This document shows positions 26,460 through 47,590 of a DNA stretch of 64,000 bases, piece after piece (the stretch's first letter is position 1; each line of letters starts with the position of its first letter). Under the pieces are notes generated by a model, which was given only the letters and a program-made list of their open reading frames with translations, was not told where the DNA came from and did no database searches. Location of the stretch: positions 2,294,001 through 2,358,000 of the forward strand of contig OZ176053.1 in NCBI GenBank assembly GCA_964247055.1, written 5' to 3'. A program made the position numbers and the translations under genes. This stretch comes from Paragordius varius (taxonomy: Eukaryota > Animalia > Nematomorpha).

Positions 26460-27590
26460 AGCATTTTTAGGCCATCTCGGCCCGTAGCTTGTACCACTGC
26501 TTCAAAATAGCATAAAATGCCGGTTTTGAAGTGGCACCGGTTGACGCAAAATGGGCGAAATCCTATCCTCCAGGCTAGAATCGAACAATGACTGTACAAC
26601 CACATAGATTCCCATCTTTAAAACTTACCGGAAGAATTTTTATAAACTGTGACCAACTGGGCTCTTGAAGAGCTGATGAACGCGATAAGGATTATACCCT
26701 AAAAACCTCGAACACTTTTAAGCTCCTGACAACAAGGAAACGCACCAAAGTTACTAATCCTCCGTTAGAGACCAACGCAAAACTCACTCCCTGCTAACGA
26801 TGACATCGGTACCGCTGATATTTGAGGGCACCAAATTCAACTTTTATTTGAACCGGATACTTTGCTCCAGATAGAATGGTACTATTGCGAAGTCGGTAGT
26901 ATTTTAAGGTTAAACCCCACTGCAGGATAAGGTATAAACTTTTATTTTACAACACTCTGTTAAAGTCAATTGGTATTAATGTAATATCTAAAACTAAATC
27001 TGTTTATGGTAAACACCTATATTACAGTTAATTAATAATATGGACTGCTTCTTACAGATATCCCAAGAACAAAACGTACCACTGAAAGCCTAAATCATGC
27101 AAGACGCTACTCTGACCAGACTATTAGCCAATCATTATGAGACGACATCCTAAGTACAACTGAAACATGGTCGTAGGAAGGGTAATATTGACGCTTGTAT
27201 CTCTAAAATTGGCCTACCTTAAAGGCCACACTCATTTAGTAGCAAAAGAAAACCCCTTCCACACCAAAGATAAAATTAAAATTAACCCTACATTTGACCT
27301 GTCATAAACCTTTGACATTACTTTTTAAAGTAAGGATCAAACCCTATTTGTATGGTTATTTAAACTCAAATATTGCTTTTACCTACCTACAAGGCAAAAT
27401 TAACATTTCTTTTAATATATATTTATTAACTCATATTAACACATCTAACATGAAGACATTTATATATGTATGTAGATACTAACGTCAAACCCAACCCCCG
27501 ATGTGTCTCCCCGCTCTGAAGCTCAATGCCTACGGGTGAGTAGGGATTGCCTTGACCGCAGGTGGCCAACGATCTTCCGAAGCTACACAC
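26460..27590 (+). mobile_element. Heavily decayed I-group LINE 3' part (RT C-terminus, RNase H, Cys/His region, 3' UTR)
   Basis: GC-richer island. Broken frames give SLYHCFKIA*NAGFEVAPVDAKWAKSYPP (similar to HH.G.R.A.GAFRTSPV.SL.AE...P), WTASYRYPKNK (similar to W.PSH.GI.GNE) and LAYLKGHTHL (similar to L.RLR.GHT.L). Confidence 0.55.
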
Positions 27591-27687
27591 TCTAATTGTT
27601 TACTTGTAATTTTACAATATATTTAAAGATTCTAGATTTTAACAAAAATTTTAAAATATGCTGGTTATGATACATTCATTAATTTAA

Positions 27688-28442
27688 ATGTATTCGCCTG
27701 AAGATTTCTTTGGTTGCTATCTATTGTATAATTTAAATCCTAAACACAAAGGCAAAACATACATTGGTTTTACTAATGATCCAAATAAACGCATAAAACA
27801 ACACAATCAAGGATTTTATTCTGGGGGTGCCAAAAAAACTCATAATAAAGGCCCATGGGATATGGTACTAATAGTTTATGGGTTTCCTAACAAAATCTGT
27901 GCTTTGCAATTTGAATGGGCTTGGCAAAATCCGAAATGTTCCAGAAATCTTAAACATCTTACTTTGTTAAAAGATAGAAAAGAAACTTTATTTAAATATG
28001 CAATCAGAATAATGACAAACATGGTAAACGAACCACCTTGGAACCGAATGCCTCTAAATATAAGTTGGTTGAATGATAATTATACGGTTTAATTAATATA
28101 TAATTTAGATTGATTTAAACAAAATACCTTCTCATATCCCTATAAAATCAGAAAAAATTGTTTTTTCTAAAACCAAACCCACGCCTTTAATCGTTCCCCA
28201 AGAGGATTTATGTTACCTTTGTAACAATTCAATAGTATATGTGATTTACTAAATTTTAGATTATAAATGATAGAATTATTTGCCCAAATACGGCATGTAA
28301 ATGCCAAACTCATCTACAATGTTTATCAAGCAATTTTTTGCAACAGAGCGGTGAATTAAACGAAATTTTGCCCATAAAAGGAGCTTGTCCTGCTTGTAAA
28401 CTCATGTTTCTATGGGGACAAATTATTCAATCTAATAAATAA
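27688..28442 (+). CDS. SLX1: Structure-specific endonuclease subunit SLX1 (GIY-YIG + C-terminal zinc finger); 3 exons: 27688-28086, 28109-28234, 28260-28442
   Basis: GCYLL...TYIGFT...RIKQHN...GGAKKT...GPWDMVLIVYGFP...ALQFEWAWQNP, then IPSHIPI and CYLC...CPNTAC...HLQCL...CPAC...WG. The last two exons join only if 22- and 25-nt introns are removed. Confidence 0.95.
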
Positions 28443-28470
28443 AATGTCCATATATAAATTTTAATTTATA

Positions 28471-30804
28471 TCACGTTTTTTCATCATTATCAGTAGTTGT
28501 AGGAATAGCATTTAATAATTCAATTTTGCTGTCAGAATCTTCCTGTTTATTAGTGTTTGTAGTTTTTTCTTTAACTTGAATATTTTTGCGTTTAGGTAGG
28601 ACACTGATAAATGCTTCAGTCCAATTTGGATTTTGTATATAATTGACTAGGATATGGAAGACGTGATCAATCGTTAGGACTTTGGTTGTTTTCATTTGCA
28701 AATATTGTGCTAAGGGTAGTTTTGCGTGATTTATCCCCATTTGCAGACATTGACTAAATGTAAAATTTCGATAAGTAAGTTTTATACAATTTAAACTTCA
28801 TTGAACACTTTAAGTTAGTCCTTGAACATTACAAGTTGGTCCGTTGACTTTTTGTTACTTTAACTTTTATCAATCAAATTGTGTATCATTCATCTATTTT
28901 ATCATTCTTTTAATCCTTTAGATATCATATAAACCATTTGCACTTCAAGAGTGTCCTTGTATATTCAAGTTGGTACTTTAATTTTTTGTTTGGTCATTAA
29001 CTTTATCAATCGAATCGTGTAACATTAATCTATTTTATCATTTTTAACCAATTTACTTTATTTATAAGCCTTTAAATGAAATTATTTTTAATGAAATGTT
29101 CAGAAATCGTATATATTTATTACTTTCTTAAAAAGGATTTTTATATTAAAAAGATTTAGCACCAAAATTAAAATATATAAGTGTAAAAACATTTATAAGG
29201 TATTAATTTTTTAAAAAGGAAAAAAATAGTTTGAAAAAAAGTAATTTTGAATAGAAAATTAGATAAAATAAAATAATACATGCAAAAATTATGATTAACT
29301 CCAGTAAAAATTTAAGGACCAACTTGAAGTGTTCAAGGACCAACTTGAGAAGTGTAAACTATATAAAAAATTGTTAAATTTATGCTTATTTTTTTGCTCC
29401 ATAATTTAAAATTGATTTAGAGTCTTTATATACCAATCCTTTGCTCGCTAATTGTAATTAATATCAAAATTAATTATATAGGTATGAGAGTAAGGGAAAA
29501 GGGGACAATTAATTGGTTATTAATACAATACGAGATTTTTTTTACGAAAACAAACAAAATTTCCATATTTTGAGTTTCTTAAACTAAATGTGGTAGCACA
29601 ACTATTTTAGTCTCAAAAAGTCATTATGACTGATTTTTGTATTTATGGTGAAAAAAATATTTTTGAGCACATAATTTATAAAAAGCGGGTATTTTTGATT
29701 AAAGTTACCTAATTGGTTATTTGTTCAAAAAATATATGTCAAAAAATCAAATAAGGTTCGATGAAATTTAACCATGGTTCCTGTTAATAAAGATTGGTTT
29801 AAAAGTATTTTATAAACATTTAATTTGATATCATAAAATATATATATCTTACTTATATGTATGGAATTTATTGCGATTATGATCAACCAAACCCCCAATC
29901 ACATACGTATGTTTACTGGAAATGGTGTCAAGCGTATTTTCAGAATCACTCGTTAAATATATGATATCAGACTTGGGGAAATGATTCATAAAATGATCTT
30001 CATATAATTGAACCTATGAAATTATTAAAATATAGTAAAAGCTATAACATAAATAGCGCATTTTAAAAGGTAAACGCTTGATTTATCTCATAAAATTAAC
30101 CAATTTTGTGCTATATAAAGAATAAAAATAAAATATACAGAGTTGCTTAAATTTAGTAGCGAAGGAATTTAGGGGTTATTGACCATGTATTTAACGAATG
30201 AGCTATATTTGAAAAAATTGGGCATAATATATTTTAGACTTTTAAAGCTTTATGTTTTCAAATTTTAATTTTACAGCAATTTTCTTACTTTCCAATTAAC
30301 GCTATTTTGTTCATCTAAAAGCGATCGAACATTTTGGCTTACGCCGGATGCGTGAAGGTTAATAGGGTTTGTAAGGCGTCTATTAATAGCATAACATCTT
30401 TGAAATTGTTTCAGGGCCTTTTTTGCTTCCTAAATAAAAGATAACCATTATTAAAAACTTGTTCGGTCATTAAATCAAACGAGGAAAAGTCAATGACGAT
30501 ATTTACTGCATCACTATTTGGTTGATTACTTTTTAATTTTTTCCGTTTAATAATTTTGCCATTTAATTTGGCAAATTTGTTTTTACGCTTTGCTCTTTCG
30601 TTCAATCTGAAAATAAAAGTGAACATTATACCTAAATTCCTTCTTGTTTGCTAGCCAAGCCATTTTTCTCAAAATCTTTTTTTGATAGGATTTTGTCTGC
30701 TTTTCGAGAATACCATTAAGGTAGACGTAGTTTTTGCGATCGTTATCATTTGAAAAGTCAATTTTATCCAGCTCCAAATTTTTTAAATCTTCAATTTTGT
30801 GCAT
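28471..30804 (-). CDS. TRMT10: tRNA (guanine-N1) methyltransferase TRMT10 (TRMT10A-like); 5 exons: 30804-30632, 30606-30459, 30429-30289, 30013-29853, 28753-28471
   Basis: SPOUT TRM10 motifs IVIDFSSFDLMTEQE...QFQRCYAINRR, IIYLTSDSENTL, YVIGGLVDHN, AKLPLAQYL...VLTIDHVFHIL...WTEAFISVLPKRK. All junctions are GT-AG and phase-consistent. Confidence 0.94.
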
Positions 30805-30820
30805 GATGATTAGTGAAATT

Positions 30821-33800
30821 ATGGATATGTTTGCATGCGGTTTAAATTCAAAAAATTTTCCGGAAAATTACAAGTATTAATTGTACATTAAATTTTAGAT
30901 TCGATTTTTTGGTTAAAAAATTTGAATTAACTGAAACTCAAAACGATGCGGAAAATATCTTAGAATTGTCACACATAGATTTGAATGCTACTTATGATGA
31001 ATTAAAACAAGTTTTGAGTTAATAATTTCTTAGATTTTAAACTTTAAAGCCTTATATGCTCAACATTTTAGTTATCCTGCAATTTTAATCAATTGTCCTG
31101 AAAATGCTCCAATTTCGATGATTCAAATATTGAATCAAATTATATATGACGATTTATTTAATGTACAAATCGTGCTTCGCTTCACATCTACCGAAAGCTC
31201 GTTTAATTATTTATCAAACGAAGCATGGAAACGGTTTTTTGTTTTTTTGAAATATAATTTTTTAGGTGGACAAAAATTATCTCACTTCTGAAAAATAGCA
31301 TTGTGGGAACTTCAAGCGTTGGGACGACTTCAAACAACATTCATTCTCAAAAAATTCAGCTTGCCTTAGATTTAAACTTTTTCAGTAAAAAGGCTCGTTA
31401 TATGATAATATTTTAATATAAAGTTTTTATTTGTTCTTTTTTTAAATTGTATCTTATAAATACAGCATCGAACTGTGAAAATGCAAACTGTGCAGGAGAC
31501 GGTATTGTAGTGCATAATCCTTCATTAAACCATACCAGTGATCCATTTGATAAATGGTTATGTGAACCAATCAAATACATTGTTGTAAGTAGCGATTGTT
31601 TTGTCCTAAATAAAAAGGGCTACCCTATTTTCCCCAAAATCCTACAACACACATTTCAAAGACTGTGTCGGGTTAGTTTTTGTCATTACTTAATAAATGT
31701 ATATTATAATAATAATAATACAGTCATTACTTTATTGTGCGCATTAATAAAAAAATGATTTTTTATATTTGGATAATTTTTTCAACCTTAAATTTTTAAA
31801 CGAAATATGCATTTTTTTTTAAAAATGACTTATTTGGACATTCATAATCAAGCATAATTTAAAAAATGTTAACGCGCAATTTATTGGCTAAAATATGTGG
31901 GAAAAAGATTTCTCTTTAATAGTTCATCCCTTATTAACGCATTTTAACTAATACGCGGCCTTTTGATTAAATCTTTTTTGACGGATTAAAAATATAACTT
32001 ATATTTAATTTACAATAATTTGCATGAAAAAAATCGAATTTATCATATAATTTATAAGATATTATTAATCTTTTATTTTTACAAATTTCATTAGTTATAA
32101 AAGTATCAAGTTTACATTGATTTTATATATATAAAACCAAAAAAAATCAGTTTTATTATTATTTTAACTTATAAATTGAATGGTGTTGCACAAAAAAAGT
32201 CGCAAAAATTTATTTCGACGAAAGATTTAAACAGGGGGAATTCACGGAAATGTCCACACAAAAAAGTTTACTATATTTAACATTTCCAAATTATAGGTTT
32301 TTCATAAATTTTTATTTTATTTATAATATAAATTTATCCAATTTTCATTCATAAGAAGAACCTATCACGACCTAATATTGTTTGCTTAAACTAATATACC
32401 CTTTTTCAGTCAAAGGCTACATTTCATATTCTCAAACAAACGCAACATTTTTTCAAGCAAACCCAACTAAAAAAATGTTGCTTATGCATGAAATTGTCTT
32501 CGCTTGAAAAAATGTATAAGCTTTCGTTGACAGTATTACAATGAAATATTAGTTAAACGACATTTCTTTTCTCGAATTTAATAATATTCATTTCAATTTA
32601 TTATAAAACTTTAAATTATTATAGATTTGCCCATACTATATATTCCAAGTGGTAGAAACCAATGATGGCACACCAATCCCCTTTTCCAAAGCACTCAATG
32701 TTTATTACGAATATTTAGAACATTTATGGAAGGTTTTTCCCCCCTCACATCATTTTATTTTTCCAGTTTTTGTTTTAAAATGAGGCTTAAAATTCAAACA
32801 TATATATATCATTTACAATTCTAATACACACCCTTAAACAATTCTAATTTACCCTTGATTCAAATTCACCCTCAAACAATTCAAATTCACCCTCAAACAA
32901 TTCAAATTCACCCTCAAACAATTCAAATTCACCCTCAAATAAACATTATATGTTTTTTTAAGATTAATAAAATTTACCTATATTTTTATATATTTCTGAA
33001 TAATAAAATTATGTTTTAAATTAAAATACGATTGAAAAAAATAATAAAGTATGGTATAAAGATATAATATATATTAATAATGACTCAATATTAATTCGAA
33101 AACATATAATTTATTTTAAGGGTGAATTCGAATTGTTCAAGGGTTGAACTGTAAATGGTATGTATATATTTATATATATATATATATATATATATAGGCT
33201 TATCATACCCAAAACCCGTATAATGAGATAACATCGGGATACGAGGATGTATTACAATACCCATTACAAGTAAGTTTTGGGCTTTTTTTTCAAATTTATA
33301 ACTTTTTTAAATTAACTTTTATAATAATTTTAGCCATTAAAAGATAATCTTGATGCCCACACCTATGCAACGTTTGAAAAAGATGGGCCAAAATATGCAC
33401 AATATGAAGAGGTAATTATATATCCAATCACACATTCATTTTAACATCAAACTTAAAAAATGATTACAAAAAATATTGCCTGAATATTTTAAAAAAAACG
33501 CCTATTTTTAAAATTGTAAGAAAAAAAACCATTAAATTACTAAAATTTGTACAAAAGTGTTAAACACTAATACAAGAGTTTATTTTTACGATATTTAACC
33601 TTAATATTATATATATACTTTTTAGGCTTTGTATTATGCCTTGCTTGACAGTGGATGTAATCAAAACGAACCCAATTCCCAAATAATGTATGTATTGTTT
33701 CATTATTTCAGATTAAATTTGAAAAATTTAAAATGAATTTTTTTTCTTTTAGAAATGTTATGATAGTTGGGGCCGGGCGTGGCCCATTAATTACCGCAAC

Positions 33801-36800
33801 GTTAAATGCTGCAGCAAGATCTCAACGCTCTGTATATGTAATTGGGGTAGAAAAAAACCCATATAGTTTTCTTAGGTATATATATATGCTTTTAAATTTA
33901 CGTATAAATTTATTAAAATAAAACAATATTATCACTTTTTTAGCAATAAAAATATACTTTTTTTTCATTCATGAAAGTACTTTTATTACACCAAAGCAAT
34001 TGTTTTCTTGTTTTTTGTTTTATTTTACCATTTAAAGATTATATGTTCATATTGCTTTTATAATTTAGTCTACAAGAAAAATTGAAGAATGATGTATTAT
34101 GGTCTAAAAATTACGTTTCTCTTGTGATTGGAGATATAAGAAATTTGAATGGTTGTCTTTTTTATCATTCCGATGCCTTAGTACAGGATGCACACGAGAT
34201 GTTACAATCTTTGGAAAAAGTAATATTTCGTGTTGAGTTTTAAGTTTTGCCAAAAATCTAATCAATAAAGCATTTGATTAGGGTGCAATTTAAATTCACC
34301 CTTAAACTTCAAATTCAATCTTAAAATATATATAATATGTTTTTGGCCTGGTATAAAACTCATCATTATTCTGAATTATTTCTTTATGACATAGCCATAT
34401 TATTTAGTATCATGTTAATTCAACCGAATTTTATTGTTTAAAATATAAAAAATATAGGATATTTCAGACATTTAAAAACACATAAATTATTTTAGGATTA
34501 ATTTGAATTGTTCAAAGATAATTTTGAGTTTGTGTTAGGAGCCCTAACAGGCGATTGTTTTTTTATTAACTTTACATAAAGACTGATGTGAATTTAAGTC
34601 AGTAAGATAGTAAGACGGTAAGACAGTAAGATAGTAAGACGGTAAGACAGTAAGATAGTAAGACAGTAAGCATAAGACAGTAAGATATTTGTATAAAAAA
34701 CATACATTCGTGATAAGTCTGCTAATAGGAGACTTATCAAAATTTCAAAGTATTATAACTTGAAAAATATTGCATCTTTTTGAATTCTGTAAACTGGAGG
34801 ATTGAAAGTCAGGTATCCTTTACAAATAATATATAGGGTTGAGTGAAAATGCCTAATTCTTTCGACACGAACTGAGTTTACTAAACTCCAAAAATTGTAT
34901 AAAACTAAAAAATATATAAAAAATCTTGGGTATTATAGAAGAAAATGGCATCTATACCATTGTTTATTATTTGGTAAATATTTTTTTTATATTTTTACAG
35001 TTTTAACAATTTATTTTAAAAAAATTGTACTTCATGGTTTTGACAACAACAAAAATAAATATAGCTAAATATTATTATAATAAATTTGAATTTTGTATTC
35101 TAAAATCAGCTTTTAACCCGATAATAACCGTTTTCCCCTAAAATTTTACATGCAGAACGATATCAGATCCAGGGAAGTTTTGGTGGAATTACTTGAAAAG
35201 TAAATTATTAATAAATAATTAAAAATTTTTAGATCATCCCTTCCATATTAATATATTAGATATATTAGTTAGCAAATCAACTATTTTTTTATTGACTTCA
35301 AGTATTTGTTGTGTGTTTATAAAATTAGTGTACATCAAATCACTAAGGGAGAGTTTTGATGTGTTTAAATATTTTTCTATATAAAATACAAAATGATGTT
35401 TAGTAAATAATAAACAAATTATCATATTCTCCAACATTACTCTATCAAAAGAAGGTACATATTTAATAATTGTATGAAATACTTTCTGTAGCCTCTTGAT
35501 CTTTTAGAGTTTTTCCAGCCTCAATAATTTTTATATTTTCTTCAATTTCACGAATATGTATGCCTTCTCCAGCCTCACGATTTTGTATGCCTTCTGCCGG
35601 CGGTGGTTGTATAATAATTTCTTCACCCTCCTCGTCCATAATCATCTCCGTACTGGAATTTATGGAAGTATTTTCATCTAGTTCCTCCTGAGCACTATTA
35701 AGATAGACAGAAGGACACTCATTTATGATCTAATTGTTAATGCCTGAGCCCATGGAATCTACATATATATTTCAATGCAAACTACTTAATATATAAGCAG
35801 CTGAAATTCGCCATCACAATCATTGGATTTATTTTTACTAAATTTATTTAAGGATAAAATTTTTTGGATATCTGTATATTATTTAATAATATTAAACCAA
35901 ACGTATCAAAATTATTGCCTTGATTTTTATGACCTTGTATTTCGCTACTGGATGAATATTCAAGTAATGAGTATAATTTTTTTTCATATTCCAGAAAAAT
36001 AGGTGGCTTTTTGTTTCCAGTTTGTTTCATTTTTTGCAACTTCTTTTTAATCGTATATTTAATATTAGTAAACATCTTCTGTAACTGTTTTAAGTTCTGG
36101 CCATCATTAACTTTTGTTATATATTCACTAAACAATAAATCCCATTGATCTTTGTGCATAACTAAACTGTTGGATTTTCTAGAATATAATATTGGAAATT
36201 TTATATAGAAAAATATTTGAACACATCAAAACTCTCCCTTAGTGATTTGATGTACACTAATTTTATAAACACACAACAAATACTTAAAGTCAATAAAAAA
36301 ATAGTTGATTTGCTATATCTAATAAATTAATATGCAAGGGATGATCTAAAAATTTTTAATTATTTATTAATAATTTACTTTTCAAGTAATTCCACCAAAA
36401 CTTCCCTGGATCTGATATCGTTCTGCATGCAAAATTTTAGGGGAAAACGGTTATTATCGGGTTAAAAGCTGATTTTAGAATACAAAATTCAAATTTATTA
36501 TAATAATATTTAGCTATATTTATTTTTGTTGTTGTCAGAACCATGAAGTACAATTTTTTTAAAAAAAATTGTTAAAACTGTAAAAATATAAAAAAAATAT
36601 TTACCAAATAAGAAACAATGGTATAGATGCCATTTTCTTCTATAATACCCAAGATTTTTTATATATTTTTTAAGATTTATACAATTTTTGGAGGTGTTTA
36701 GTAAACTCAGTTTCGTGTCGAAAGAATTACGCATTTTCACTCAACCCTATATATTATTTGTAAAGGATACAATACCTGACTTTCAATCCTCCAGTTTACA

Positions 36801-39800
36801 GAATTCAAAAAGATGCAATATTTTTCAAGTTATAATACTTTGAAATTTTGATAAGTCTCCTATTAGCAGACTTATCACGAATGTATGTTTTTTATACAAA
36901 TATCTTACTGTCTTATGCTTACTGTCTTACTATCTTACTGTCTTACCGTCTTACTATCTTACTGTCTTACCGTCTTACTATCTTACTGTCTTACCGTCTT
37001 ACTATCTTACTGACTTATTCACATCAGTCAAAGATTTTTATATGTGTATTATTTTATTAAATTTAGGATATTTTTATTTTTAAGGCAATAGTTTATAATT
37101 TTATTTTTGGAAAATTTATGTTTTACAAGCCTTTGATCACTTCACCTATATTTTATTATATTATATAAATATCTATTTTCAAAGAAACCATATCCTGACA
37201 TATTATCGCAATATCTTATGCAGTCAAGTAATGATTATAAACAACAATTATTACCAAACACATTTTGTTTTACTTCACAAAAACAACCAGAAAAAAACAA
37301 AATGAAAAATGTCAACTACGCATCATTGCAAATGACAATAACATTTGAAGCTAATATAATTGCAAGCGAATTATTGGGTAGTTTTGGTGACAATGAGCTC
37401 TCCCCAGAATGCTTGGAGGGGGCACTCCCATACTTGAAAGGTTTTATTTTTGATTTTTAACATATTTCATCTTTTTTTGCACACTCATATATATGAAATA
37501 TTTTATATTTTGTATTTATAATTTGGATTTTACTGTACTAGCAATTTTATTTTTTTTCTGGTTTTATTGAGCTTAAAAAATCTCCTTGAATAACATTTAT
37601 TTATGTTTATAATGTAGATGCCAAAATTAAAAAATAACCCAATTAATGCGTTTTACTGGCAATTTTTTTCTCTTATAGTCATAATTATAAATACTGCTTT
37701 CGGTATTAAATCATTCATAATTTAGTAAAATATTGAAGTTTGTGCCCAACAAATTTTGTGAAAAATTGGTTAGTCTTTTTTAGTTAAAACGCCTTTTTAC
37801 TTTTTTATAGCTAAAAAATTAGTGTTGTCATTTGGCTTTACTAAAATTATAATTAGCTATAGTATATGGTGCTTTGTCCACTGAATTGACTTGATCTCAG
37901 GTTTTTTGAATATAATTTTTATTAAAATTATATGATTTAAAAAAAATATATATACATATGCTGAAATTCACCCTTAAACGATTCAAATTCATCCTAAAAT
38001 AAATTGAGTGCTTTTTAAGATTAAAAATTACTAATATTTTTCATATATTTTTTACTAAAAAAATAATAAACCATGTCATATAATATATATCATTTTAATA
38101 ATTAGTTATATTAGACCAAATAGACCGAAAACACAATTTATTTTTAGGGTAAATTTGAATTGTTTAAGGATGCATTTGAATTGTTTAAGGGTGCATTTGA
38201 ATTGTAATTGGTATATGATGTATGCGAAAATAGAAAATGGTATATGTATACCTCAATCTTATACCTCTTATTTGGCACCTATTATGTCCCCTAAATTGCA
38301 TGATGAAGTAGCTTACATGGACCGTGTAAATATTACAAAGGTAAAATATAATTTTGTTTGCTTGGTTATTTTACAATTATGATACATTGTTTAATCCATT
38401 TATTTTTGAGTTTTTAAACAAAAAAATTAGGTGATAAAGAGTGTAAACTAATGCACACATATTCCTTTTTATAATGGTAGAAAGGCTGTTTTTTAGTTTT
38501 ATTACGTGTTAAAATATAAAATTGCGCTACGCGGGGATAGGCCAAACGAGTTTACCGTAAAAACTTTTGAAAAAAATTAATCTATTTGTGCTACAGTGCA
38601 ATGCTAAAATTTCTAAAGTTAAGTTTATCATTATCTTTCGAACAAATAAATAGTGTATAAGTTGAGGTTTTTCTATATGTTTTTGTGAAAAAAAAACTTT
38701 TGTAAAGCAAAAGTATTTATGCAGAACATCTAAAATAATTCTCTGTTGTTTGGTAATTCATCAACGAATATCAAGTGCCAGCACTACACGGAGAGATGAG
38801 CAGGAGTTTGTTGATCAATTATTTTAACAGCTTGTCCGCATTAATACGATTGTTCCCGAAACCTCCTATTTTTATCGTATTAAGAGAAGTAAAAAGCCAG
38901 TTTTCCAAAAGAATTTATATTAAATAGCTGTATTATTGGATAAAAGAGGCATAAAAAATAACTTTATATAAACATACACACACTAAATTTAGCCAATACA
39001 CTTTATCGTAAAGCAATTTGGCAATATTTCAAAAACTGAGAATAAAAATTAACTTACACCCTATTTTTACGCTTTATACTCTTTTCAACCTTTAATTGGT
39101 ACGCTTTATACTCTTTTTAAAAATCATTTTGTTTCTCCTAGTTATATTTCTTATTTTTCAAAATATATACTTTATCTAAAATATTTATTTATTAAAATTT
39201 TAATAATGATTATATACAATAGTTCAAAGCATATTCCTACTCCATTAATTTGTTAGTTAAACAAAAATTATTTATTTATTAAAATAATTAATCATTAATT
39301 AGATGGCCTCTTTTTAAATGTATGAAAAGATTAAAAAATTATAATTAACAAAAATTTATTTGTCACGTTTATATTTATAATATCATATATAATTAACCAT
39401 AATCATTATATATTTAACACATGAGTAATTTGTTCTATGTATTTGAGATTGTTGAATTGAACAAAAGTGCCAAGGTCCTTACCTATCATATGTTTAGTAT
39501 TTTTATTCCTGTACAAATTTTTGGTTTTTTTATCTAAAACAAATTATTTCCTTCTCCATTATTATCTGTAAAATCTTTGCTAACACTTTGATTCAAATTG
39601 GGGTATCCAAATACCCCAGGCTAAATTTAAATTAAATTTTTTAAAAAAGTACTAAAGGAAACGGTCCCATAAATTTATGCTTCTATCCTGATACATGTTA
39701 TATAAATATGCCAAAATATCTTGATAAAATTTTGTTTTGAAAAAAAAGTTCCATCTCAAACTACTTCGACGCCATTTTTATTTTAAAAAATTTTGCAAAA

Positions 39801-42666
39801 TATCGTCTTCATTTAATTTTAAGGGTAAAACTAAAGCTTTTTTATATAAATTACAACTAACATTGATAGAAATAGAAAAAGCGGTTTATTTTGTATTATT
39901 TTTTAATTTTACAATTTGACACATGTCACGTTGGCTAAATTTTTACCTTTCGGTTTTAGCTTTAAATAATTAATATCAAATATTTTTGAATAAATTTTTT
40001 TATATACTTCGGTTTATCAATGTTATATAAGTGCAAGATTTTGCCATGGTTTCGATTCCTTCCATATTTTTTATAGAATTTAATTTTAAACAGGCCTGGG
40101 GTATTTAACTACCCCAATTTGAATCGAAGTACAAAAATGAATGTGTTGTATCCAAGTGTTAAGATGAGATTATGAAAAAATTTTGGTTATAGGCTTGAAA
40201 AAATGGTATATCTAATTTGTGATATATACTAAATGATTTACTACCTATTCGTATCTACAATAGTGAATATTTCAATATCGTTATACCGCGTAGATGAAAG
40301 CAGCTTGTTGATGAGTTTTAGGAATAATTTATAGTTTTCGCTCCTTTTTTTGGTACTAAACATTAACTATTAAATGACTTTCCAAGGGCTTTAGGTAAAC
40401 TGCTCTCTAACCACCCATCCATTTATGCATTAAATTAATTGATTGTTCCTAACAGGCTGTCCAATAGAGGGGACCAGTATCGAGCCTAGACATTTCTTAA
40501 GATTTAAACCTTCGAAAGGTAACACCAAGGTTATTGAGAGATAAATGCCACCAGCCATCTAAATAAATAAAAAATGGTGTTAACGCGTTTAAATTTAATG
40601 TGATAATTGCTAGGTCGAGCCTAAAATGAAGTTTGATATTCCGGCTTAAAAAAGATTGAACAACCCAATTTCACACCTCTTAAAATGGACAAAACCTATC
40701 ATCATAAGATTTAGTTGTATTAAAATCACCAATTATATTTCCATTGCCATTATTTGTTATTATAATAAAATAAATTATCAAGCTTTTTCAGAGTATAACT
40801 TCTGCGATTCCCATGCCGCCTTATCATGTAGCATTTATTTAATACAAAAGTAGCATTTTAGCTTTAATTTTTTTATGTTAACAATTATTTTAGTAACACC
40901 GAATTTGTATCCAAAAATAAACTTCACTCATTCTAAACATAATGGTTATCGAATTATTTTTCTTTTTTAAGACGGAAAACAGTTTCTCGCTAATTTTGAA
41001 AATTTGAACATAAAAAAAACGAAAATTTTATGATAAAAACAACATACCATTATTCTGGATTGGGTATATACAATTTACAGTTCAAATTCACCCTCGAACA
41101 ATTCAAATTCACGCTAAAAATAAATTATGTGTTTTCGAATTAATGTAATTCATTATTAATATGAAATATATCTTTATGGCATAGTTTATTATTTTTTCAG
41201 TATTATTTTAATTTGAAACAAAATTTTTATTTTTTAAAAATATATGAAATTTATGTTAAAAAAATATATATTTATTTAAGGGTATATTTGAACTATTCAG
41301 AGGGTGAAATTAAATTGTAAATAGTTTATATAGTTAGCGCTCTGGTCTTAAAATGAAAATGGTAATTCTAAATATTGGTAGTGAAAAGGAATATGGTATA
41401 TTACATTTATGCAACACAAATTTTTTCTGATAATATATCAATGTCCATCGATTTGTTTGTCGTTATTGAAACCTTTATTTGCAAGGTGAATAAATCACAT
41501 AAGAAATTGCTTTTATTTGGTGATTTCCGAATTTTTCGCGGTCCGCATGTTGGATTTATAGTAATAACCAATGCAAAATGATTTGTAATTTTAACGTATA
41601 ATTTAGACCTAAACTTGTCACATTATAGGTTGGTGGCTTAAAATCAAGCCCATCTTTTCCATGCCGCCCTCAACCAAAAATTAAAACACCAAATTTAAAT
41701 TGCGGCCAGTAAAAAGCTTTTTTCCCGATTAATTTGGATATTTATTGTGTATTGTTGTAATTAGAAAGGAGTTAATGAATTCCAATAAATCGGGGTGGGT
41801 TTAATTAAATTTATTCATTCATATCAAGCCAAAATGTGCAAATATTATTAAAACATAGTTGCATTATTATTTTTTCTTGTGCACAATGACATTTTTGGGG
41901 TAGTTTTATATCCCAAAGCTTAATCTTCTAAATAAACCACTGTTTCGAAAATTGTGTTAGTTAAATTTAATGGTCAAACATTGTTCTTTTGTATTAGATA
42001 AAAACTTAGGTTTTTGCAGCTTTTTAACTCATGGAATTTGAAATTTCGCAGCTTTTTACATGGAATTTAAAATTGGAACAGCTCCAAAACACGGTTGAAT
42101 AATCAGCTGATTTTTAAAATTGATAAATATAATGTTTTTACTAGTAAAATGTAAATTGAAAGCTTTACAAAGTTAATTTTTTGCATTTTTTAACTATAAT
42201 ATACATTTAGTTGCCTGTTGAATTAACAAGTAAAAAAAATTATACAAAAAATGGCGGTCCGAAAAGTTTAAGAGGTGGATATTTTACATTTTTAAATTTT
42301 GTTCTAAAACATTTGCCTAAAAAGCTGAGCAAAGCATATTTTTTAATATGGCCTCATACCTTAAATATTTTTTAAGATATTCAAATATCAAATCGTTTTG
42401 GGATATAAAACTGCCCCAAAAGGTAATGTCAAATTATATGTTATCTAATATTAATCTACATAAATACAAAATTATACATATAGGAAATAGTAATTTCCCA
42501 AACAAATTTTCCGAATAAATTTTACCCAATTCAAGCAATGATTAGGAAAAATTGTTAAAATGTTTAAAATCTAATTAAATATTTGTTATTGCCTGCCCAT
42601 ACATGTTGCATATCCGGTCTATAAAGCCATTTGTGTAGGGGATATCCCTACTCTACTTTATAATGC

Positions 42667-42697
<31 letters not shown>

Positions 42698-45600
42698 ATA
42701 TTATCATTATTCATCTTGACAGGATAATACATTTTATAGCCATTATGAGATGGCATTTGTTGTGCACATGGTTAAGGTTATGTTAATTTCTCCACCCCAA
42801 AAAGTATTTACTTTTACACACTTGAATCGACAAGAACTATCAACTCAAAGTAATGTACACCATGAAATAAACGATAATAATAATGGAAACGTGGAAAATG
42901 CCATAAATCATGCGTTGGAAATAAATGTTTTGTCCCAAAAAGTTATATTTTAGTTATATACAGTTACTACTCAAATTTACTCTTACCAATTCAAATTCGC
43001 CCTTGGACAATTCAAATTTACCCTTGAACAATATACCCTAAAGATAAATTAAATATTTTCGGGCTAATATAACTTATCATTAATATTAAATATTTCTTTA
43101 TGACATAGTATATTATTTTTCTAGTTATATTTCATAAACGAAATTTTATTTAAAATATAACAAAATATAAGAAATTTTTAATATTTTAAATATTTTATGG
43201 TGAATTTGAATTGTTTAAGGGTGTTGAGGTAAGTATATATATATAGATATATATTAATAAAATTAATATTTTTTTGTTTTAAAACAATAAAAATCAAGAT
43301 TAACCGTAATGCAATACACTCTTATTCGGGGGTATTAGTATTTAAGTTCAATATTTGTTTTGTCCTCTAAATTTTTGTTGAAAATATTAAAATTCGCCTG
43401 GGTCTTATTTTTCTTCTATATATATATTTCATTTACATCAAAATTTTTGATTACCATTTTTCTTTTAATATTAATCGCCACACTACCTATTAAATTGGCT
43501 TTTATTTTTATAATTACAACTCTTCAAGGTATCCCTTTTGTCTTTAAAAATTAATTTTACGCTTTAACGCCTCAAAAATTTATTTATTTATTATATCACC
43601 TTTATATCACCTTTATACGCTATTTTCTCCTTTCAAAGGAGGTAAGCGTGTTAGAGTTTTCCATTTGTTTCTATCTTGAGCTTGTTCGATATCGATACTG
43701 AGGGAATCTAGGTCTTCTTGAATGGTGGATTGCCAGGTTTTATACGGCCTTCCTTTTTTGTTTTTATTATTGGTTGAATAAGACTGTATGAGCTTGATCC
43801 AGTTTGTGTCTTGCGCTCTGTAGATGTGACCAGCCCAACGCAAACGGTATTCCCGGATAGCTGTATTAATTGGTTTAATTTTTAGAGTTTGATAGGGGAA
43901 AAATTTGGCTTGGAAATTGTATATGTTAGGGTTATGTGCGAAAAGAATGGCGTTTAGGATCTTTTGCTCACCCTTTTGCAGTAATAGTAGATTTGATTTA
44001 GTCATAGGCCATGTTTCCGTACCATATAGTATAGCAGGACGTATAGCCGTCATAAAAATTTTTGCCTTTGAGCTGAGTAAAACGTATTATTATTTATTTA
44101 TTATAGAATTAGTTTTTAGCAATTTAATAACTTTAACATCTACTTTACTTTTTTAAATATATAAATCAACCGAATTAAAATTCCTTTATCATAATTAAAA
44201 TGATTAATAAATCTTTGGCACAAAGTATGTTTTAAAATCTAAAAAAAGAAAAATTTACAATAATAATAATTAGCTTTCTTTTTTGAATCTCTTTATTGTT
44301 CGAAATAGTTTTAGCTAAAATACTTAATTTTATTCTATTATTTCATATTATGGGTTGGGTCTAATTAGAGTTTATTCATTATTTTAAACAACCCCTAAAA
44401 AAGCTTTTAATACGCGTAATATAAATTTAATAAAATGGTAAACCTAAATGTGATATATATATATATATATATATATATAATTGGAGAATTTTAACATATA
44501 TTTGATTGTTAATTGCTATATTACGCTGCTTGGGGGGGGGGTATAAAAATATCTTGATAAAATATATATATGTAATTTGATAGATATAGGAGTATCATAG
44601 TGCTTTTGGTTTAGGGGCTTCGAGGGATAAATAAAGTTATTAGCACTTTTGTAGTTATCGCTCATCAAAAAATGGCAAAATTGCATATTACATAAAAACC
44701 AAATGCTATATTTCAAATTATTAAAATATATTATAAAATATAGTATTAAGCAAATCATTATTTTTATAAACTTTAATTTTTAGATGTGGTGGCTTTGAAA
44801 CGGTTTGCCTCTCTAAAAGATTTTGTATCTTGTTTTAATGTAATCTAGATTACATGGCATCGATCAAATTTTCGCACAAAAGCATATTTTGTTTAAAAAT
44901 TTATTGTTTACTGAGGTATTGTGGAAACAGTCTAGCACCGCTTTAAGATGTTTTACAAACACCTTTTCTTTATAATTTGATTATACTGAACATTTATCAT
45001 CACCTTAGAATTTTGATAAATATACTTTCGTCTTTAAATTTATGTAAATTGTTTTTTTTACAAATCACCCATATTTCAAACATAGCTAATGAACCATTAA
45101 CTTACAATTTTAGTAGGTTATGGTAATGTTCAGCTTCATGGAATTATATATTAAAAGTATTTTTTAATATCAAGCGTTTTTACACCGTTTCGATCATTAT
45201 TCTTAAAAATAGTATGAAATAACAAATTGTTAGTTATAAATAATTTTGAGCTTGCTATATATTTATTTTTCGGAAAAATAGTAAACTATATCCCGTAATC
45301 TTGGCATTTTTGCGATTTAAAGGGGAGCTAATTTGAGATTTTGGAGGCCACACCTTGCTTTATATATATATATATAGTTTATCTGATATTTTTTGGAAAA
45401 TTAAACATTTAACATTCACCAAATAAGTTTATATCGCAAAATATGCGAAAATTTTGCCATTTCCTTATACGAAGAGTTTCGTAGCCACAAAAGTCGTAAA
45501 CCTCTCGTTGTACAAAAAATAGATGTCTTTTTGTAGTTTTTACACCCTATATCTATATACTTTTATTTTTTACTGTGATATTTTTACCCATTTCAAAAAG

Positions 45601-46843
45601 CAAACTCACCCTATTTATGAAACATAGATATAGTGGGGTTGATAAACGGTTAATTAAACATATTTTTTTCGTTTTTCAAAATAGAATGAAGATTTTACGT
45701 ATTCCACCTTATACCAGGAATGTAAATTTGAAAAAGCCAACACTGAATGCATTTGCCATGGTTTTGCTGGATTTTTTGATTGTATCCTATACAAAACAGT
45801 GAAATTAAGTAAGTTTTTTAAAGTTTTTTATTGTATTGAAAACAAAATGTAAAATACTAATTATAATATTTTTTCCTATATATCCTACCTATATGGACAC
45901 AATTGTTAAAATATAAAATAGAGTGTTTTAAAATCTCTATTTCGTATTTTAGGATGGATTCCAATTTAGGACTAAAAGTAGTTTTAGAAAAAAATTATTT
46001 GTCTTTTACGTTTTACCTTTTGTTTTGTATTTTACCATATTAATTTTGACTGTATTAATATTTTTTGATAGATAAAGAATTTGTAATTTTTATATCACAT
46101 TTTTTCCTGTAACATAATCACGTAATGATCATAAAATTTTTATTGATATATATGCTTTATTCCCATAACTTTACTACAACAAGTGTGTTAAATTATTTTT
46201 TATATAAGGTATTGTGCCTGAAACTCATACGCCAGATATGTTTAGTTGGTTTCCCATATATTTTCCCATAAAAGTAATAAAATAGGAGGAATATACGTTT
46301 TTTTTTACATTTTTATATATGAATACTTTTAATAGCTTAAATCTTCTTTGAATGTGATTTTCTCTCGAAATATACCATTTACAGTTCAAATTCACCCTTG
46401 AACAATTCACCCTAAAAATAAATTGTGTTTTCGAACTAAAATAAATCATTATTAATAATAAATATATCTTTATGGCATAGTTTATTATTTTTTCGGTATT
46501 AGTTTAATTTAAAACAAATTTTTTTATTTTTTAAAAATATTGGTAATTTTTAATCTAAAAACATATATATATATTATTTGAGGGTGAATTTAAATTTCTT
46601 AAGGGATGGTTTGGCATACTTATTTTTTTTTCACTTTGAAAAAATTGGATTTTTTTTATAAAAATAATTTATTAATATATGTATATATAGGACCCACAGA
46701 CTATACGCCATGGGGATGAAATTGGCTTAAGTATATGGCGATGCAGGAATAAATATGCTGTATGGTATGAATGGTGTCTGACAGAACCTTACGCAAGCTA
46801 TATACATAATGTTCAGGGACGTAGTTATTCTATAAGTTTGTGA
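30821..46843 (+). CDS. PRMT5: Protein arginine N-methyltransferase 5; 17 exons: 30821-30873, 30899-31010, 31034-31233, 31266-31384, 31466-31671, 32625-32732, 33198-33269, 33334-33411, 33626-33687, 33753-33875, 34069-34219, 37224-37440, 38234-38340, 42723-42941, 45685-45808, 46209-46273, 46691-46843
   Basis: Motifs in order: FDFL, WLCEPIK...[26 protein letters not shown]...[79 protein letters not shown]...VWYEW...[12 protein letters not shown]. An in-frame ATG also exists at 30803. The exon-12 acceptor is the least certain junction. Confidence 0.93.
32807..33160. mobile_element. MITE family A (TIR TACCATTTACA, internal 21-bp CAATTCAAATTCACCCTTGAA repeats), in PRMT5 intron 6
   Basis: Termini TATCATTTACAATT / CTGTAAATGGTA and five or more 21-bp repeats. 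Other copies at about 34285-34530, 37951-38214, 41066-41328, 42957-43236, 46371-46618, 53744-54044, 60384-60606, 62527-62764 and 63709-63957. Confidence 0.8.
34581..37029. mobile_element. PIF/Harbinger-like palindromic element with ~815-bp inverted arms, in PRMT5 intron 11
   Basis: Ends GACTGATGTGAAT / ATTCACATCAGTC flanked by AAA on both sides (possible 3-bp TSD). Arms ~34581-35397 and ~36198-37029 are near-identical reverse complements. Subterminal 8-nt (YRGTAAGA)n arrays. A Myb/SANT-like ORF lies in the loop. Confidence 0.8.
35463..36159 (-). pseudogene. Myb/SANT-like DNA-binding accessory protein of Harbinger type, degraded
   Basis: [11 protein letters not shown]...[31 protein letters not shown]...EKKLYSLL fits the MSANTD/Harbinger Myb pattern (W...L.K.W.N.K...K.....TG..P). 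An acidic downstream part carries an in-frame stop. Confidence 0.72.
39580..40162. mobile_element. Second copy of the TTAA-bounded ~585-bp element
   Basis: Collinear reverse complement of 1472-2057 across its length. Confidence 0.72.
41887..42431. mobile_element. MITE family C (TIR ~TGACATTACCTTTTGGGGTAGTTTTATATCCC)
   Basis: Inverted ends TTTTGGGGTAGTTTTATATCCCAAA / TTTGGGATATAAAACTGCCCCAAAA. Related copies at ~3061-3534, ~715, ~2825 and ~3590-3830. Confidence 0.65.
43580..44060 (-). mobile_element. 5'-truncated RTE-clade non-LTR retrotransposon, antisense in PRMT5 intron 14
   Basis: ORF 43613-44053 carries RTE C-terminal motifs ([33 protein letters not shown]), followed by a short tandem tail (ATAAAGGTGAT)2 and A-rich sequence. 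Confidence 0.88.
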
Positions 46844-47469: not shown

Positions 47470-47590
47470 TCCAATTTTGTCAAGGCTGCCCAGGGCTGAC
47501 ATTGATGATGGAAAAATTGCATAGTTTCGGGGTTTGAACTAAGGCACGGAGTGTAAGAGTCCGGCGCCCTACCTACTATACCATCACGCC
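47470..47590 (-). mobile_element. tRNA(Lys)-derived SINE head or tRNA pseudogene
   Basis: GGCGTGATGGTATAGTAGGTAGGGCGCCGGACTCTTACACTCCGTGCCTTAGTTCAAACCCC has A-box and B-box-like motifs and a CTCTTA anticodon loop like tRNA-Lys(CTT), but the acceptor stem does not pair. Confidence 0.5.

What the first reader, a model, noticed from the sequence alone, without database searches (positions are those of the whole stretch)
30790..30830. TRMT10 and PRMT5 are head-to-head with start codons 16 nt apart, or overlapping in one CATG
The TRMT10 ATG (minus, 30804-30802) and PRMT5 ATG (plus, 30821) are separated by only GATGATTAGTGAAATT. A further in-frame PRMT5 ATG at 30803 overlaps the TRMT10 ATG in the palindrome CATG. 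Family-like sequence starts soon after each ATG. There is no room for two conventional promoters and 5' UTRs, so the mRNAs either have near-zero leaders, start inside each other's coding exons, or use trans-splicing (an AG lies 7 nt before the PRMT5 ATG; none on the TRMT10 side). Both are SAM-dependent methyltransferases acting on RNA or RNP biogenesis.
Basis: partly seen in the sequence, partly recalled or inferred. Interest (0 to 1): 0.82.

Follow-up and report, generated by a model that had tools for sequence, protein, structure and literature searches.

The report
Two diverging genes, starts 16 bases apart
Two intact housekeeping genes (a tRNA methyltransferase and the arginine methyltransferase PRMT5) of a very AT-rich worm genome point away from each other with start codons only 16 bases apart, so their promoters must lie inside each other's coding exons, but no RNA data could be reached to show where transcription starts.

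Summary
TRMT10 (minus strand, ATG 30804-30802, five exons, 301 codons) and PRMT5 (plus strand, ATG 30821, last exon ends 46840) lie head to head. They are separated by GATGATTAGTGAAATT. In-frame PRMT5 ATGs at 30803 and 30806 make a 2-nt overlap possible. An independent DNA run spans the junction without a difference, so it is not an assembly artefact.

The mechanism is not resolved. No RNA run holds these genes.

Sequence alone argues against trans-splicing of TRMT10. There is no AG for 127 nt upstream of its ATG, and upstream ATGs at -32 and -84 favour a leader under 32 nt. The strand upstream of PRMT5 is ATG-free for 310 nt, through TRMT10 exons 1-2, so a PRMT5 start inside TRMT10 is possible.

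My best reading is one compact two-way promoter buried in the two first exons, with 5' ends that cross.

The other end of TRMT10 is just as tight: its stop lies 28 nt from the SLX1 stop.

The scan's first readers noted at least nine more such pairs (1-29 bp) elsewhere in this genome. This looks like a genome habit, not a methyltransferase partnership. The genome is probably a horsehair worm's.

The parts
30632..30804 (-). TRMT10 exon 1 (ATG at 30804-30802; 57 codons + 2 nt)
   Evidence: Open frame from the ATG. In-frame stop upstream at 30870-30868 with no ATG between. GT at 30631. The whole CDS is 906 nt with a single terminal stop.
30607..30631 (-). TRMT10 intron 1, 25 nt (GTATAA...TTTCAG)
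   Evidence: It restores the frame into exon 2.
30459..30606 (-). TRMT10 exon 2 (basic N-terminal region and start of the SPOUT domain, ...VNIVIDFSSFDLM)
30289..30429 (-). TRMT10 exon 3 (after the 29-nt intron 30430-30458)
   Evidence: Weak Pfam tRNA_m1G_MT match, profile 13-42. Splice sites.
29853..30013 (-). TRMT10 exon 4 (LTSDS...VIGGLVDHN catalytic core), after the 275-nt intron 30014-30288
   Evidence: Pfam PF01746 1.4e-9. Human TRMT10A 4FMW 4.3e-10 and yeast Trm10.
28471..28753 (-). TRMT10 exon 5 with TGA stop at 28473-28471, after a ~1.1-kb repeat-filled intron
   Evidence: ends ...DEKT*.
30805..30820 (.). 16-nt spacer GATGATTAGTGAAATT between the two start codons
   Evidence: Also covered by the independent X5 contig 30540-30853.
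30803..30808 (+). Two further in-frame PRMT5 ATGs (30803, 30806). 30803 overlaps the TRMT10 ATG in CATG.
   Evidence: Context: T at -3 for 30803, A at -3 for 30806, and A at -3 with G at +4 for 30821 (read).
30821..30873 (+). PRMT5 exon 1 ([17 protein letters not shown]..., phase 2 at its end)
   Evidence: It gives the 2-nt overhang that exon 2 requires. Exons 1-9 (1010 nt) contain no stop.
30874..30898 (+). PRMT5 intron 1, 25 nt (GTATTA...TTTTAG)
30899..31010 (+). PRMT5 exon 2 (..FDFLVKKF...). Its frame is closed upstream at 30843-30845 and has no ATG, so it needs exon 1.
31034..31233 (+). PRMT5 exon 3, after the 23-nt intron 31011-31033
   Evidence: Its end (EAWKR) plus the start of exon 4 (WTKIISL) match aphid PRMT5 DPWKIWTKFISL across the 32-nt intron.
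31266..31384 (+). PRMT5 exon 4, after the 32-nt intron 31234-31265
   Evidence: tblastn [10 protein letters not shown] against P0005 residues 158-167.
31466..31671 (+). PRMT5 exon 5 (...[30 protein letters not shown]...)
   Evidence: Pfam PRMT5_TIM 5.6e-11. tblastn 1.4e-9.
32625..46843 (+). Rest of PRMT5. Exons include 32625-32732, 33198-33269, 33334-33411, 33626-33687, the SAM motif near 33753-33870, the double-E loop near 37350-37439, 38236-38310, near 42700-42850, near 45745-45810 and 46211-46270. The last exon ends at 46840, followed by the stop. Introns are kb-sized and TE-rich.
   Evidence: Pfam PRMT5 and PRMT5_C. tblastn with aphid PRMT5. Motif scan.
30858..30865 (.). TTCCGGAA, the core of the 16-bp palindrome AATTTTCCGGAAAATT, inside PRMT5 exon 1 and 54-61 nt upstream of the TRMT10 ATG. 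Candidate ETS/GABP-type two-way promoter element.
   Evidence: It is the only copy in the 64 kb (0.62 expected for the whole window). The motif was picked post hoc, so the evidence is weak.
30494..30802 (+). 310-nt stretch with no plus-strand ATG upstream of the PRMT5 start cluster (antisense of TRMT10 exon 1, intron 1 and most of exon 2)
   Evidence: only 0.8% of ATG-to-ATG gaps in the window are this long; synonymous resampling of TRMT10 codons 1-95 gives P=0.07. His-2 of TRMT10 uses CAC, not CAT.
30812..30813 (+).
   Evidence: The preceding sequence is purine-rich, unlike the confirmed acceptors.
30834..30836 (-). First upstream ATG on the TRMT10 strand (-32, out of frame, uORF MQTYP*). A second lies at 30888 (-84).

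Best explanation
Two intact, conserved housekeeping genes are transcribed away from each other from one very compact two-way promoter. Its elements lie inside the first exons and first tiny introns of the two genes, and the 5' ends of the two transcription units cross. TRMT10 most likely starts within about 31 nt of its ATG, that is in the 16-nt spacer or in the first codons of PRMT5. PRMT5 most likely starts inside TRMT10 exon 1 (or, less likely, in the spacer) and is translated from the in-frame ATG cluster 30803/30806/30821/30827. Neither mRNA needs a spliced leader. Shown here: the anatomy, the intactness of both genes, the reality of the junction in DNA, and the absence of an acceptor on the TRMT10 side. 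Inferred: where transcription starts, and that the promoter is shared.
For: Both genes are intact with catalytic motifs. TRMT10 is 906 nt with one terminal stop and carries VIGGLVDHN. PRMT5 carries [30 protein letters not shown] and WYEW.

The coding status of the first exons rests on open frames, not homology. At about 0.088 stops per random codon in 25% GC DNA, 57 open TRMT10 codons and about 120 open PRMT5 codons across three phase-consistent 23-32-nt GT-AG introns are very unlikely by chance. The N-terminal lengths fit full-length homologues. TRMT10 exon 4 aligns at about our residue 164 versus 176 in full-length yeast Trm10. The PRMT5 WTK motif sits at about our residue 123 versus 158 in aphid PRMT5.

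The junction is present without a difference in an independent DNA run.

On the TRMT10 side there is no AG for 127 nt upstream, and there are uATGs at -32 and -84. This points to a short, unspliced leader.

On the PRMT5 side the upstream strand is ATG-free for 310 nt (0.8% of gaps are this long; P=0.07 after conditioning on the TRMT10 protein), and four in-frame ATGs lie within 27 nt.

The only TTCCGGAA in the window lies 54-61 nt upstream of the TRMT10 ATG, inside PRMT5 exon 1. CCGGAA is the GABP core that drives two-way transcription in human divergent promoters (PMC2077898).

The same locus is equally tight at its other end: the SLX1 and TRMT10 stops are 28 nt apart.

First-reader notes list at least nine more pairs of this kind in the genome (unverified).
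Against: There is no RNA evidence at all. No RNA run holds the stretch, and the three presumed RNA runs of the species gave no contig here even at 80% likeness.

The ATG-free stretch is only marginally significant once the TRMT10 amino-acid sequence is taken into account (P=0.07). The TTCCGGAA motif was picked post hoc. Promoter motifs of this phylum are unknown.

A crossed arrangement makes sense-antisense overlap and collisions between the two initiation complexes likely. That is awkward for two constitutively needed genes.

The first exons have no statistically significant homology on their own.
Confidence: 0.5

Rival explanations
1. Abutting, near-leaderless mRNAs. Both genes start inside the 16-nt spacer, with leaders of about 9-10 nt. 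One 8-bp sequence, TTAGTGAA / TTCACTAA, would be read as an initiator in both directions, about 31-32 nt downstream of a TATA-like TTTAAA on each side (30781-30787 and 30846-30841). The transcripts would overlap by only a few bases.
For: The symmetric layout can be read. On the plus strand TTTAAAT begins at 30781 and a candidate A(+1) is at 30812. On the minus strand TTTAAA begins at 30846 and a candidate A(+1) is at 30814. TRMT10 needs a leader under 32 nt to avoid a uORF. SLX1 also has a uATG at -21, so short leaders may be common here. mRNAs with leaders of about 12 nt are translated in animals (TISU genes, median 5' UTR 12 nt; PMC2518114). The 3' UTRs at this locus must also be tiny.
Against: TTTAAA is common in 75% AT DNA, and the initiator was chosen post hoc. 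Neither ATG lies in a TISU-like context (GAAATTATGGAT and ATCATCATGCAC, against AAGATGG in the TISU paper). Two pre-initiation complexes would occupy the same ~70 bp. The two clearly TATA-driven genes in the window (H3 and the HSP20-like gene) place their TATA at about -95 and -55 from the ATG, which implies ordinary leaders. The model does not explain the 310-nt ATG-free run.
Confidence: 0.22
2. Spliced-leader trans-splicing hides the real promoters. PRMT5 pre-mRNA starts far upstream, inside or beyond TRMT10, and receives a leader at AG 30812-30813, leaving a 7-nt genomic leader. TRMT10 is trans-spliced at a distant acceptor or not at all.
For: An AG lies 7 nt before ATG 30821. The animal is probably a nematomorph. 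By general knowledge nematomorphs are the sister phylum of nematodes, which trans-splice most mRNAs. Many very tight gene boundaries are noted in this genome.
Against: TRMT10 has no AG for 127 nt upstream, and any acceptor further out would leave two uATGs in its leader. The PRMT5 AG lacks the T-rich tract of all ten confirmed acceptors nearby. No SL RNA gene or Rfam hit is present in the window. The paper library holds nothing on trans-splicing in Nematomorpha. No cDNA was available to test it.
Confidence: 0.12
3. One of the start codons is mis-assigned. Either PRMT5 has further coding exons upstream (beyond TRMT10) or starts at a downstream Met (31118), or TRMT10 starts at Met48. The true starts would then be far apart.
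For: Exons 1-3 of PRMT5 and exon 1 of TRMT10 have no significant family match on their own. The PRMT5 N-terminal region is about 35 residues shorter than in aphid PRMT5.
Against: Exon 2 of PRMT5 is open but has no ATG and needs a 2-nt overhang, which exon 1 supplies exactly through a 25-nt GT-AG intron typical of this genome. tblastn with a full-length PRMT5 finds no N-terminal match on the plus strand between 27001 and 30800. The 47 codons before TRMT10 Met48 are open (about 0.013 by chance). A Met48 start would make the N-terminal region about 60 residues shorter than in yeast Trm10. There is no acceptor upstream of the TRMT10 ATG.
Confidence: 0.08

Closest known systems
Bidirectional (divergent) promoters of animal housekeeping gene pairs, e.g. 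the ~10% of human genes with TSSs under 1 kb apart, many bound by GABP (PMC2077898)
   Same: Head-to-head orientation, housekeeping functions, no separate intergenic promoter for each gene, and a CCGGAA-type palindrome close to the starts.
   Different: Here it is the start codons, not just the TSSs, that are 16 nt apart. All promoter DNA must therefore be coding exon or tiny intron of the partner. Co-expression, factor binding and TSS positions are untested.
TISU genes: mammalian mRNAs with very short 5' UTRs (median 12 nt) translated without scanning (PMC2518114, PMC3177215)
   Same: Housekeeping genes for which a leader of about 10 nt would suffice. This shows that leaders of this size work in animals.
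   Different: Neither ATG here has the TISU context. Leader lengths are not measured.
Nematode-type SL1 trans-splicing of divergent genes (general knowledge, not tested here)
   Same: It would allow start codons to sit next to an acceptor while the promoter lies elsewhere. The host is probably from the sister phylum.
   Different: There is no acceptor on the TRMT10 side and only a weak one on the PRMT5 side. No spliced leader is known or was found.
Overlapping or abutting transcription units of very compact eukaryotic genomes, such as microsporidia, nucleomorphs and Giardia (general knowledge)
   Same: Near-zero intergenic spacers at both 5' and 3' ends. In the same locus the SLX1 and TRMT10 stops are 28 nt apart.
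   Different: This is an animal genome that is not compact overall. PRMT5 spans 16 kb, with TE-filled introns of 1-4 kb.

Membership tests
TRMT10 / Trm10 (SPOUT tRNA m1G9/m1A9 methyltransferase, Pfam PF01746) | SPOUT catalytic domain recognisable by profile | tested here: met
   Exon 4: PF01746 1.4e-9, above the gathering score. Best solved relative is human TRMT10A 4FMW at 4.3e-10, followed by yeast Trm10 and TRMT10C.
TRMT10 / Trm10 (SPOUT tRNA m1G9/m1A9 methyltransferase, Pfam PF01746) | Conserved catalytic Asp in the GG(L/I)VD motif | tested here: met
   VIGGLVDHNRNK aligns with VIGGLVDHNHHK of 4FMW.
TRMT10 / Trm10 (SPOUT tRNA m1G9/m1A9 methyltransferase, Pfam PF01746) | Uninterrupted full-length reading frame | tested here: met
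Five exons, 906 nt, a single terminal stop.
TRMT10 / Trm10 (SPOUT tRNA m1G9/m1A9 methyltransferase, Pfam PF01746) | tRNA position-9 methylation activity | not testable with these tools
   Needs an enzyme assay.
PRMT5 (type II protein arginine methyltransferase) | Three-domain architecture: TIM barrel, Rossmann methyltransferase, C-terminal beta-barrel | tested here: met
   PF17285 5.6e-11. PF05185 5.4e-10 and 3.5e-11. PF17286 0.0012, which is weak and below the cut-off. The C-terminal exons are matched by tblastn up to 1.7e-13.
PRMT5 (type II protein arginine methyltransferase) | SAM-binding GxGRGP motif, double-E loop ([17 protein letters not shown]) and FSWFP loop | tested here: met
   VGAGRGPL (33757-), [19 protein letters not shown] (about 37370-37430) and [10 protein letters not shown] (46211-46270).
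PRMT5 (type II protein arginine methyltransferase) | Complete N-terminal half of the TIM barrel encoded by exons 1-4 | tested here: inconclusive
   There is no Pfam or PDB match for exons 1-4 alone. Only the WTK motif matches by tblastn. The region is about 35 aa shorter than in aphid PRMT5.
Bidirectional-promoter gene pair | Head-to-head genes on opposite strands less than 1 kb apart | tested here: met
   The ATGs are 16 nt apart.
Bidirectional-promoter gene pair | TSSs mapped on both strands, and shared regulatory DNA that drives both genes | not testable with these tools
   No RNA run holds the locus. A reporter assay is needed.
Bidirectional-promoter gene pair | ETS/GABP-type CCGGAA element near the starts (typical, not obligatory) | tested here: inconclusive
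   TTCCGGAA occurs once in the window, at 30858-30865. CCGGAA overall is not enriched (7 found, 10.7 expected).
Spliced-leader trans-spliced mRNA | 3' splice acceptor shortly upstream of the start codon | tested here: not met
   TRMT10 has no AG within 127 nt. PRMT5 has an AG at -9/-8, but without the T-rich tract of local acceptors.
Spliced-leader trans-spliced mRNA | Common non-genomic leader on cDNAs, and an SL RNA gene | not testable with these tools
   No cDNA was available. There is no Rfam hit in the window.
TISU short-leader mRNA | TISU context around the ATG (AAGATGG core as quoted in PMC2518114) | tested here: not met
   The contexts are AAATTATGGAT (PRMT5) and TCATCATGCAC (TRMT10), compared.

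The most novel reading that the evidence does not exclude
In this animal lineage, probably Nematomorpha, divergent housekeeping genes have as a rule lost all intergenic promoter DNA. Core promoters would work from inside the partner's first coding exon and tiny first intron, giving head-to-head overlapping or nearly leaderless mRNAs genome-wide, with start codons 1-30 bp apart in a dozen or more pairs. Introns meanwhile stay large and full of transposons. The clusters of ultra-short 5' introns and the dual coding/promoter use of first exons would be parts of the same architecture.
Probability: 0.3. Interest if true: 0.7.

Novelty: new variant of a known kind. Interest (0 to 1): 0.5.

Why it matters
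If the start codons are right, every base that directs transcription of TRMT10 is also PRMT5 exon or intron, and the reverse holds too. The locus would then be a natural test case for three questions: how much promoter an animal gene needs, how two initiation complexes share about 60 bp, and how coding sequence and promoter code coexist. First-stage notes report many such pairs in this genome, so one stranded 5'-end data set would settle whether this phylum uses crossed promoters, near-leaderless mRNAs or a still-undescribed spliced leader. The last possibility bears on when trans-splicing arose relative to nematodes. If RNA shows ordinary overlapping 5' UTRs, the case is only an extreme example of a known arrangement.

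Tried and rejected
**RNA evidence.** The look-up of sequencing runs found only DNA-like holders. Read laying on three presumed RNA runs of the same species label gave no contig on TRMT10 or PRMT5 even at 80% likeness. That call is capped, so no second attempt was possible.

**Relatives.**
- The word search with the TRMT10 exon-1 ORF found nothing.
- Exact look-ups of window ORFs found nothing, so this genome is not in the protein collection.
- The exhaustive search with PRMT5 exon 5 gave only weak hits of 44% identity or less.
- The best full-length hit, P0005, proved to be an aphid PRMT5. Its transcript contigs show no TRM10 nearby.
- The HSP20-like neighbour led to Gordionus. There PRMT5 lies next to the same neighbour, but only its 3' third is within reach. 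The Gordionus PRMT5 did not appear among the 120 listed hits of the last search. Whether TRMT10 sits head to head with PRMT5 in Gordionus therefore stays untested.

**Family matches for the first exons.** None were found.

**Other checks without result.** The bacterial-type promoter scan was meaningless here. There are no Rfam or tRNA hits in the window. GCGATCG is enriched in the window (4 found, 0.54 expected) but is not tied to gene starts.

**Alternative PRMT5 intron 1.** I considered a model with donor at 30829 and a 70-nt intron, giving MDIFDFL. I rejected it as less likely: the donor GTTTGC is weaker and the first N-terminal motif would be lost. It would keep the same ATG.

Joined (spliced) protein models were used only inside scripts, to count stops and codons.

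Full report
**What is there.** The window is 21-35% GC and carries animal genes. Their introns are either tiny (23-32 nt) or kb-sized and full of repeats.

The minus strand holds a TRMT10-type gene of five exons: 30804-30632, 30606-30459, 30429-30289, 30013-29853 and 28753-28471. Its introns measure 25, 29, 275 and about 1,100 nt. The coding sequence is 906 nt with a single terminal stop. Exon 4 matches Pfam tRNA_m1G_MT at 1.4e-9. It also matches human TRMT10A (4FMW) at 4.3e-10, with the VIGGLVDHN catalytic motif.

On the plus strand PRMT5 starts at 30821. Its first exons are 30821-30873, 30899-31010, 31034-31233, 31266-31384 and 31466-31671, with introns of 25, 23, 32 and 81 nt. The gene then runs through long introns to a last exon ending at 46840. 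Pfam gives PRMT5_TIM, PRMT5 and PRMT5_C matches. tblastn with a full-length PRMT5 (P0005, later identified as an aphid's) matches 11 exons. The SAM motif, the double-E loop, MFSWFP and WYEW are all present. Both genes therefore look functional.

**The observation.** It is correct to the base. The TRMT10 ATG occupies 30804-30802 and the PRMT5 ATG 30821-30823. The 16 nt between them read GATGATTAGTGAAATT. Further in-frame ATGs lie at 30803 (sharing CATG with the TRMT10 start), 30806 and 30827. The junction is not an assembly artefact: a contig of an independent DNA run from another study covers 30540-30853 with no difference.

**Are these the true starts?**
- *TRMT10.* The frame upstream of the ATG closes at 30870-30868 with no ATG between. 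There is no AG on that strand for 127 nt upstream, so no upstream exon can be spliced in there. The next in-frame Met is codon 48. The 47 codons before it would stay open by chance with a probability of about 0.013, given about 0.088 stops per random codon at this composition. With Met1, exon 4 aligns at about our residue 164, against 176 in full-length yeast Trm10 (9xzq).
- *PRMT5.* Exon 2 is open but has no ATG, and it needs two bases from an upstream exon. Exon 1 provides exactly that through a 25-nt GT-AG intron of the local type. Exons 1-9 (1010 nt) contain no stop. The end of exon 3 plus the start of exon 4 read EAWKR|WTKIISL, against aphid DPWKIWTKFISL, which validates the 32-nt intron.
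- *Caveat.* Taken alone, exons 1-4 of PRMT5 and exon 1 of TRMT10 give no significant Pfam or PDB match. The PRMT5 N-terminal region is about 35 residues shorter than the aphid one.
- *Verdict.* I put the chance that one of the starts is wrong at about 8%.

**How it may work.** No RNA could be brought to bear, so the following is inference from sequence.
1. *Trans-splicing is disfavoured.* TRMT10 has no acceptor within 127 nt. The single AG before the PRMT5 ATG follows GCATGATGATT, whereas all ten confirmed acceptors nearby follow T-rich tracts.
2. *The TRMT10 leader is probably short.* The TRMT10 strand carries upstream ATGs at -32 (uORF MQTYP*) and -84. A clean leader must therefore be shorter than 32 nt. 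That places the TSS in the spacer or in the first 15 nt of the PRMT5 coding sequence.
3. *PRMT5 may start inside TRMT10.* The PRMT5 strand has no ATG for 310 nt upstream of 30803, through TRMT10 exon 1, intron 1 and most of exon 2. Only 0.8% of ATG-to-ATG gaps in the window are that long. TRMT10 exon 4, by contrast, carries eight antisense ATGs in 161 nt. After conditioning on the TRMT10 protein by synonymous resampling, the depletion is only suggestive (0 observed, 2.0 expected, P=0.07). His-2 uses CAC where CAT would create an out-of-frame upstream ATG for PRMT5. This fits a PRMT5 TSS inside TRMT10 exon 1. Translation would then begin at whichever of the four in-frame ATGs is reached; 30821 has the best context, with A at -3 and G at +4.
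4. *A candidate promoter element.* The only TTCCGGAA in 64 kb is the core of the palindrome AATTTTCCGGAAAATT. It lies in PRMT5 exon 1, 54-61 nt upstream of the TRMT10 ATG. CCGGAA is the GABP core that confers two-way activity on human promoters (PMC2077898). This is a post hoc observation.
5. *An alternative, near-leaderless layout.* TTTAAA boxes lie about 31-32 nt on either side of one 8-bp TTAGTGAA/TTCACTAA in the spacer. This would give 9-10-nt leaders. Animal mRNAs with leaders of about 12 nt exist (TISU genes, PMC2518114), but neither ATG here has that context.

I rank the explanations as follows: crossed 5' ends 0.5, abutting near-leaderless starts 0.22, trans-splicing 0.12, wrong start 0.08.

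**Context.**
- The other end of TRMT10 is just as tight. SLX1 (GIY-YIG 1.6e-15; SLX1_C 6.5e-17) ends with TAA at 28440-28442, only 28 nt from the TRMT10 stop at 28473-28471. AATAAA overlaps the SLX1 stop, and an ATTAAA follows the TRMT10 stop directly.
- The two clearly TATA-driven genes in the window (H3 and the HSP20-like gene) have ordinary spacing.
- First-stage notes list at least nine other head-to-head pairs with starts 1-29 bp apart elsewhere in this genome: ETHE1/RSU1, FAM114/REP, RPB10/INTS12, EXD3/PNPT1, RPL32/BUD31, DEF8/DBR1, fucosidase/RNase H2A, SF3A2/EIF2B2 and PRMT3/B4GALT7. I could not check them. They make a specific partnership of two methyltransferases unlikely and point instead to a habit of the genome.

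**Whose genome.** The only database relative of the neighbouring HSP20-like protein is from Gordionus sp. m RMFG-2023 (43% identity). In that chromosome PRMT5 lies convergent to the same neighbour, as it does here. The last PRMT5 exon is 63% identical to the Gordionus one, against 42% to the aphid one. The published Gordionus assembly has 26.9% GC (bioRxiv 10.1101/2023.06.26.546503). A nematomorph is therefore likely.

**Comparison and verdict.** This is a head-to-head pair of the bidirectional-promoter kind, taken to an extreme that is unusual for an animal: 16 nt between start codons, or a 2-nt overlap. The genome is not otherwise compact, since PRMT5 spans 16 kb. No new mechanism is shown. 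The arrangement is real, recurrent according to the scan's notes, and directly testable with one 5'-end data set.

Noticed in passing
window 28430-28475: SLX1 (plus strand, exons 27688-28089.. and 28260-28439) and TRMT10 (minus strand) are convergent, with stop codons only 28 nt apart (TAA 28440-42, TGA 28473-71). AATAAA overlaps the last SLX1 codons and its stop, and an ATTAAA follows the TRMT10 stop directly. The 3' UTRs must therefore be about 15-35 nt long, or overlap.
   Followed up: partly
window 30874-31265 and 30430-30631: Five ultra-short GT-AG introns (25, 23 and 32 nt in PRMT5; 25 and 29 nt in TRMT10) cluster within 450 nt of the shared start region. The 3' introns of both genes are 0.3-4 kb and full of repeats. 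The 32-nt intron is validated by homology across the junction (EAWKR|WTKIISL).
   Followed up: partly
L003 (Gordionus sp. m RMFG-2023, OX940784.2:10573161-10595631) against window 46211-50157: The convergent neighbourhood of PRMT5 and an HSP20-domain gene is conserved between this genome and Gordionus. The last PRMT5 exon is 63% identical. This is the best evidence here that the window comes from a nematomorph.
   Followed up: partly
window 48052-50157 (minus): A two-exon HSP20/alpha-crystallin-domain gene with a long Ser/Thr/Pro-rich region. It has a canonical TATAAATAG about 55 nt before its ATG and a 497-nt ATG-free upstream stretch. Its only database relative is in Gordionus.
   Followed up: partly
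window 7732, 30321, 30736, 47332: GCGATCG occurs 4 times, against 0.54 expected from shuffles (1 of 100 shuffles reaches 4). Two copies lie inside TRMT10 exons, one of them 67 nt upstream of the first PRMT5 ATG. Its meaning is unknown.
   Followed up: no
window 26440-27600: A block richer in GC (about 34%) upstream of SLX1, without long ORFs and without an Rfam or tRNA match. It looks like a decayed retroelement or SINE.
   Followed up: no
window 30899-31233: The N-terminal half of the PRMT5 TIM barrel appears about 35 residues shorter than in aphid PRMT5. By my memory of the human sequence it is about 65 residues shorter than in human, mostly in the loop after the FDFL strand.
   Followed up: no
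window 32850-32940, 33115-33145, 34280-34320 and other PRMT5/TRMT10 introns: Copies of one very abundant short repeat (CAATTCAAATTCACCCTCAAA and its complement). Contig depths in the related DNA run X5 reach tens of thousands at these positions.
   Followed up: no
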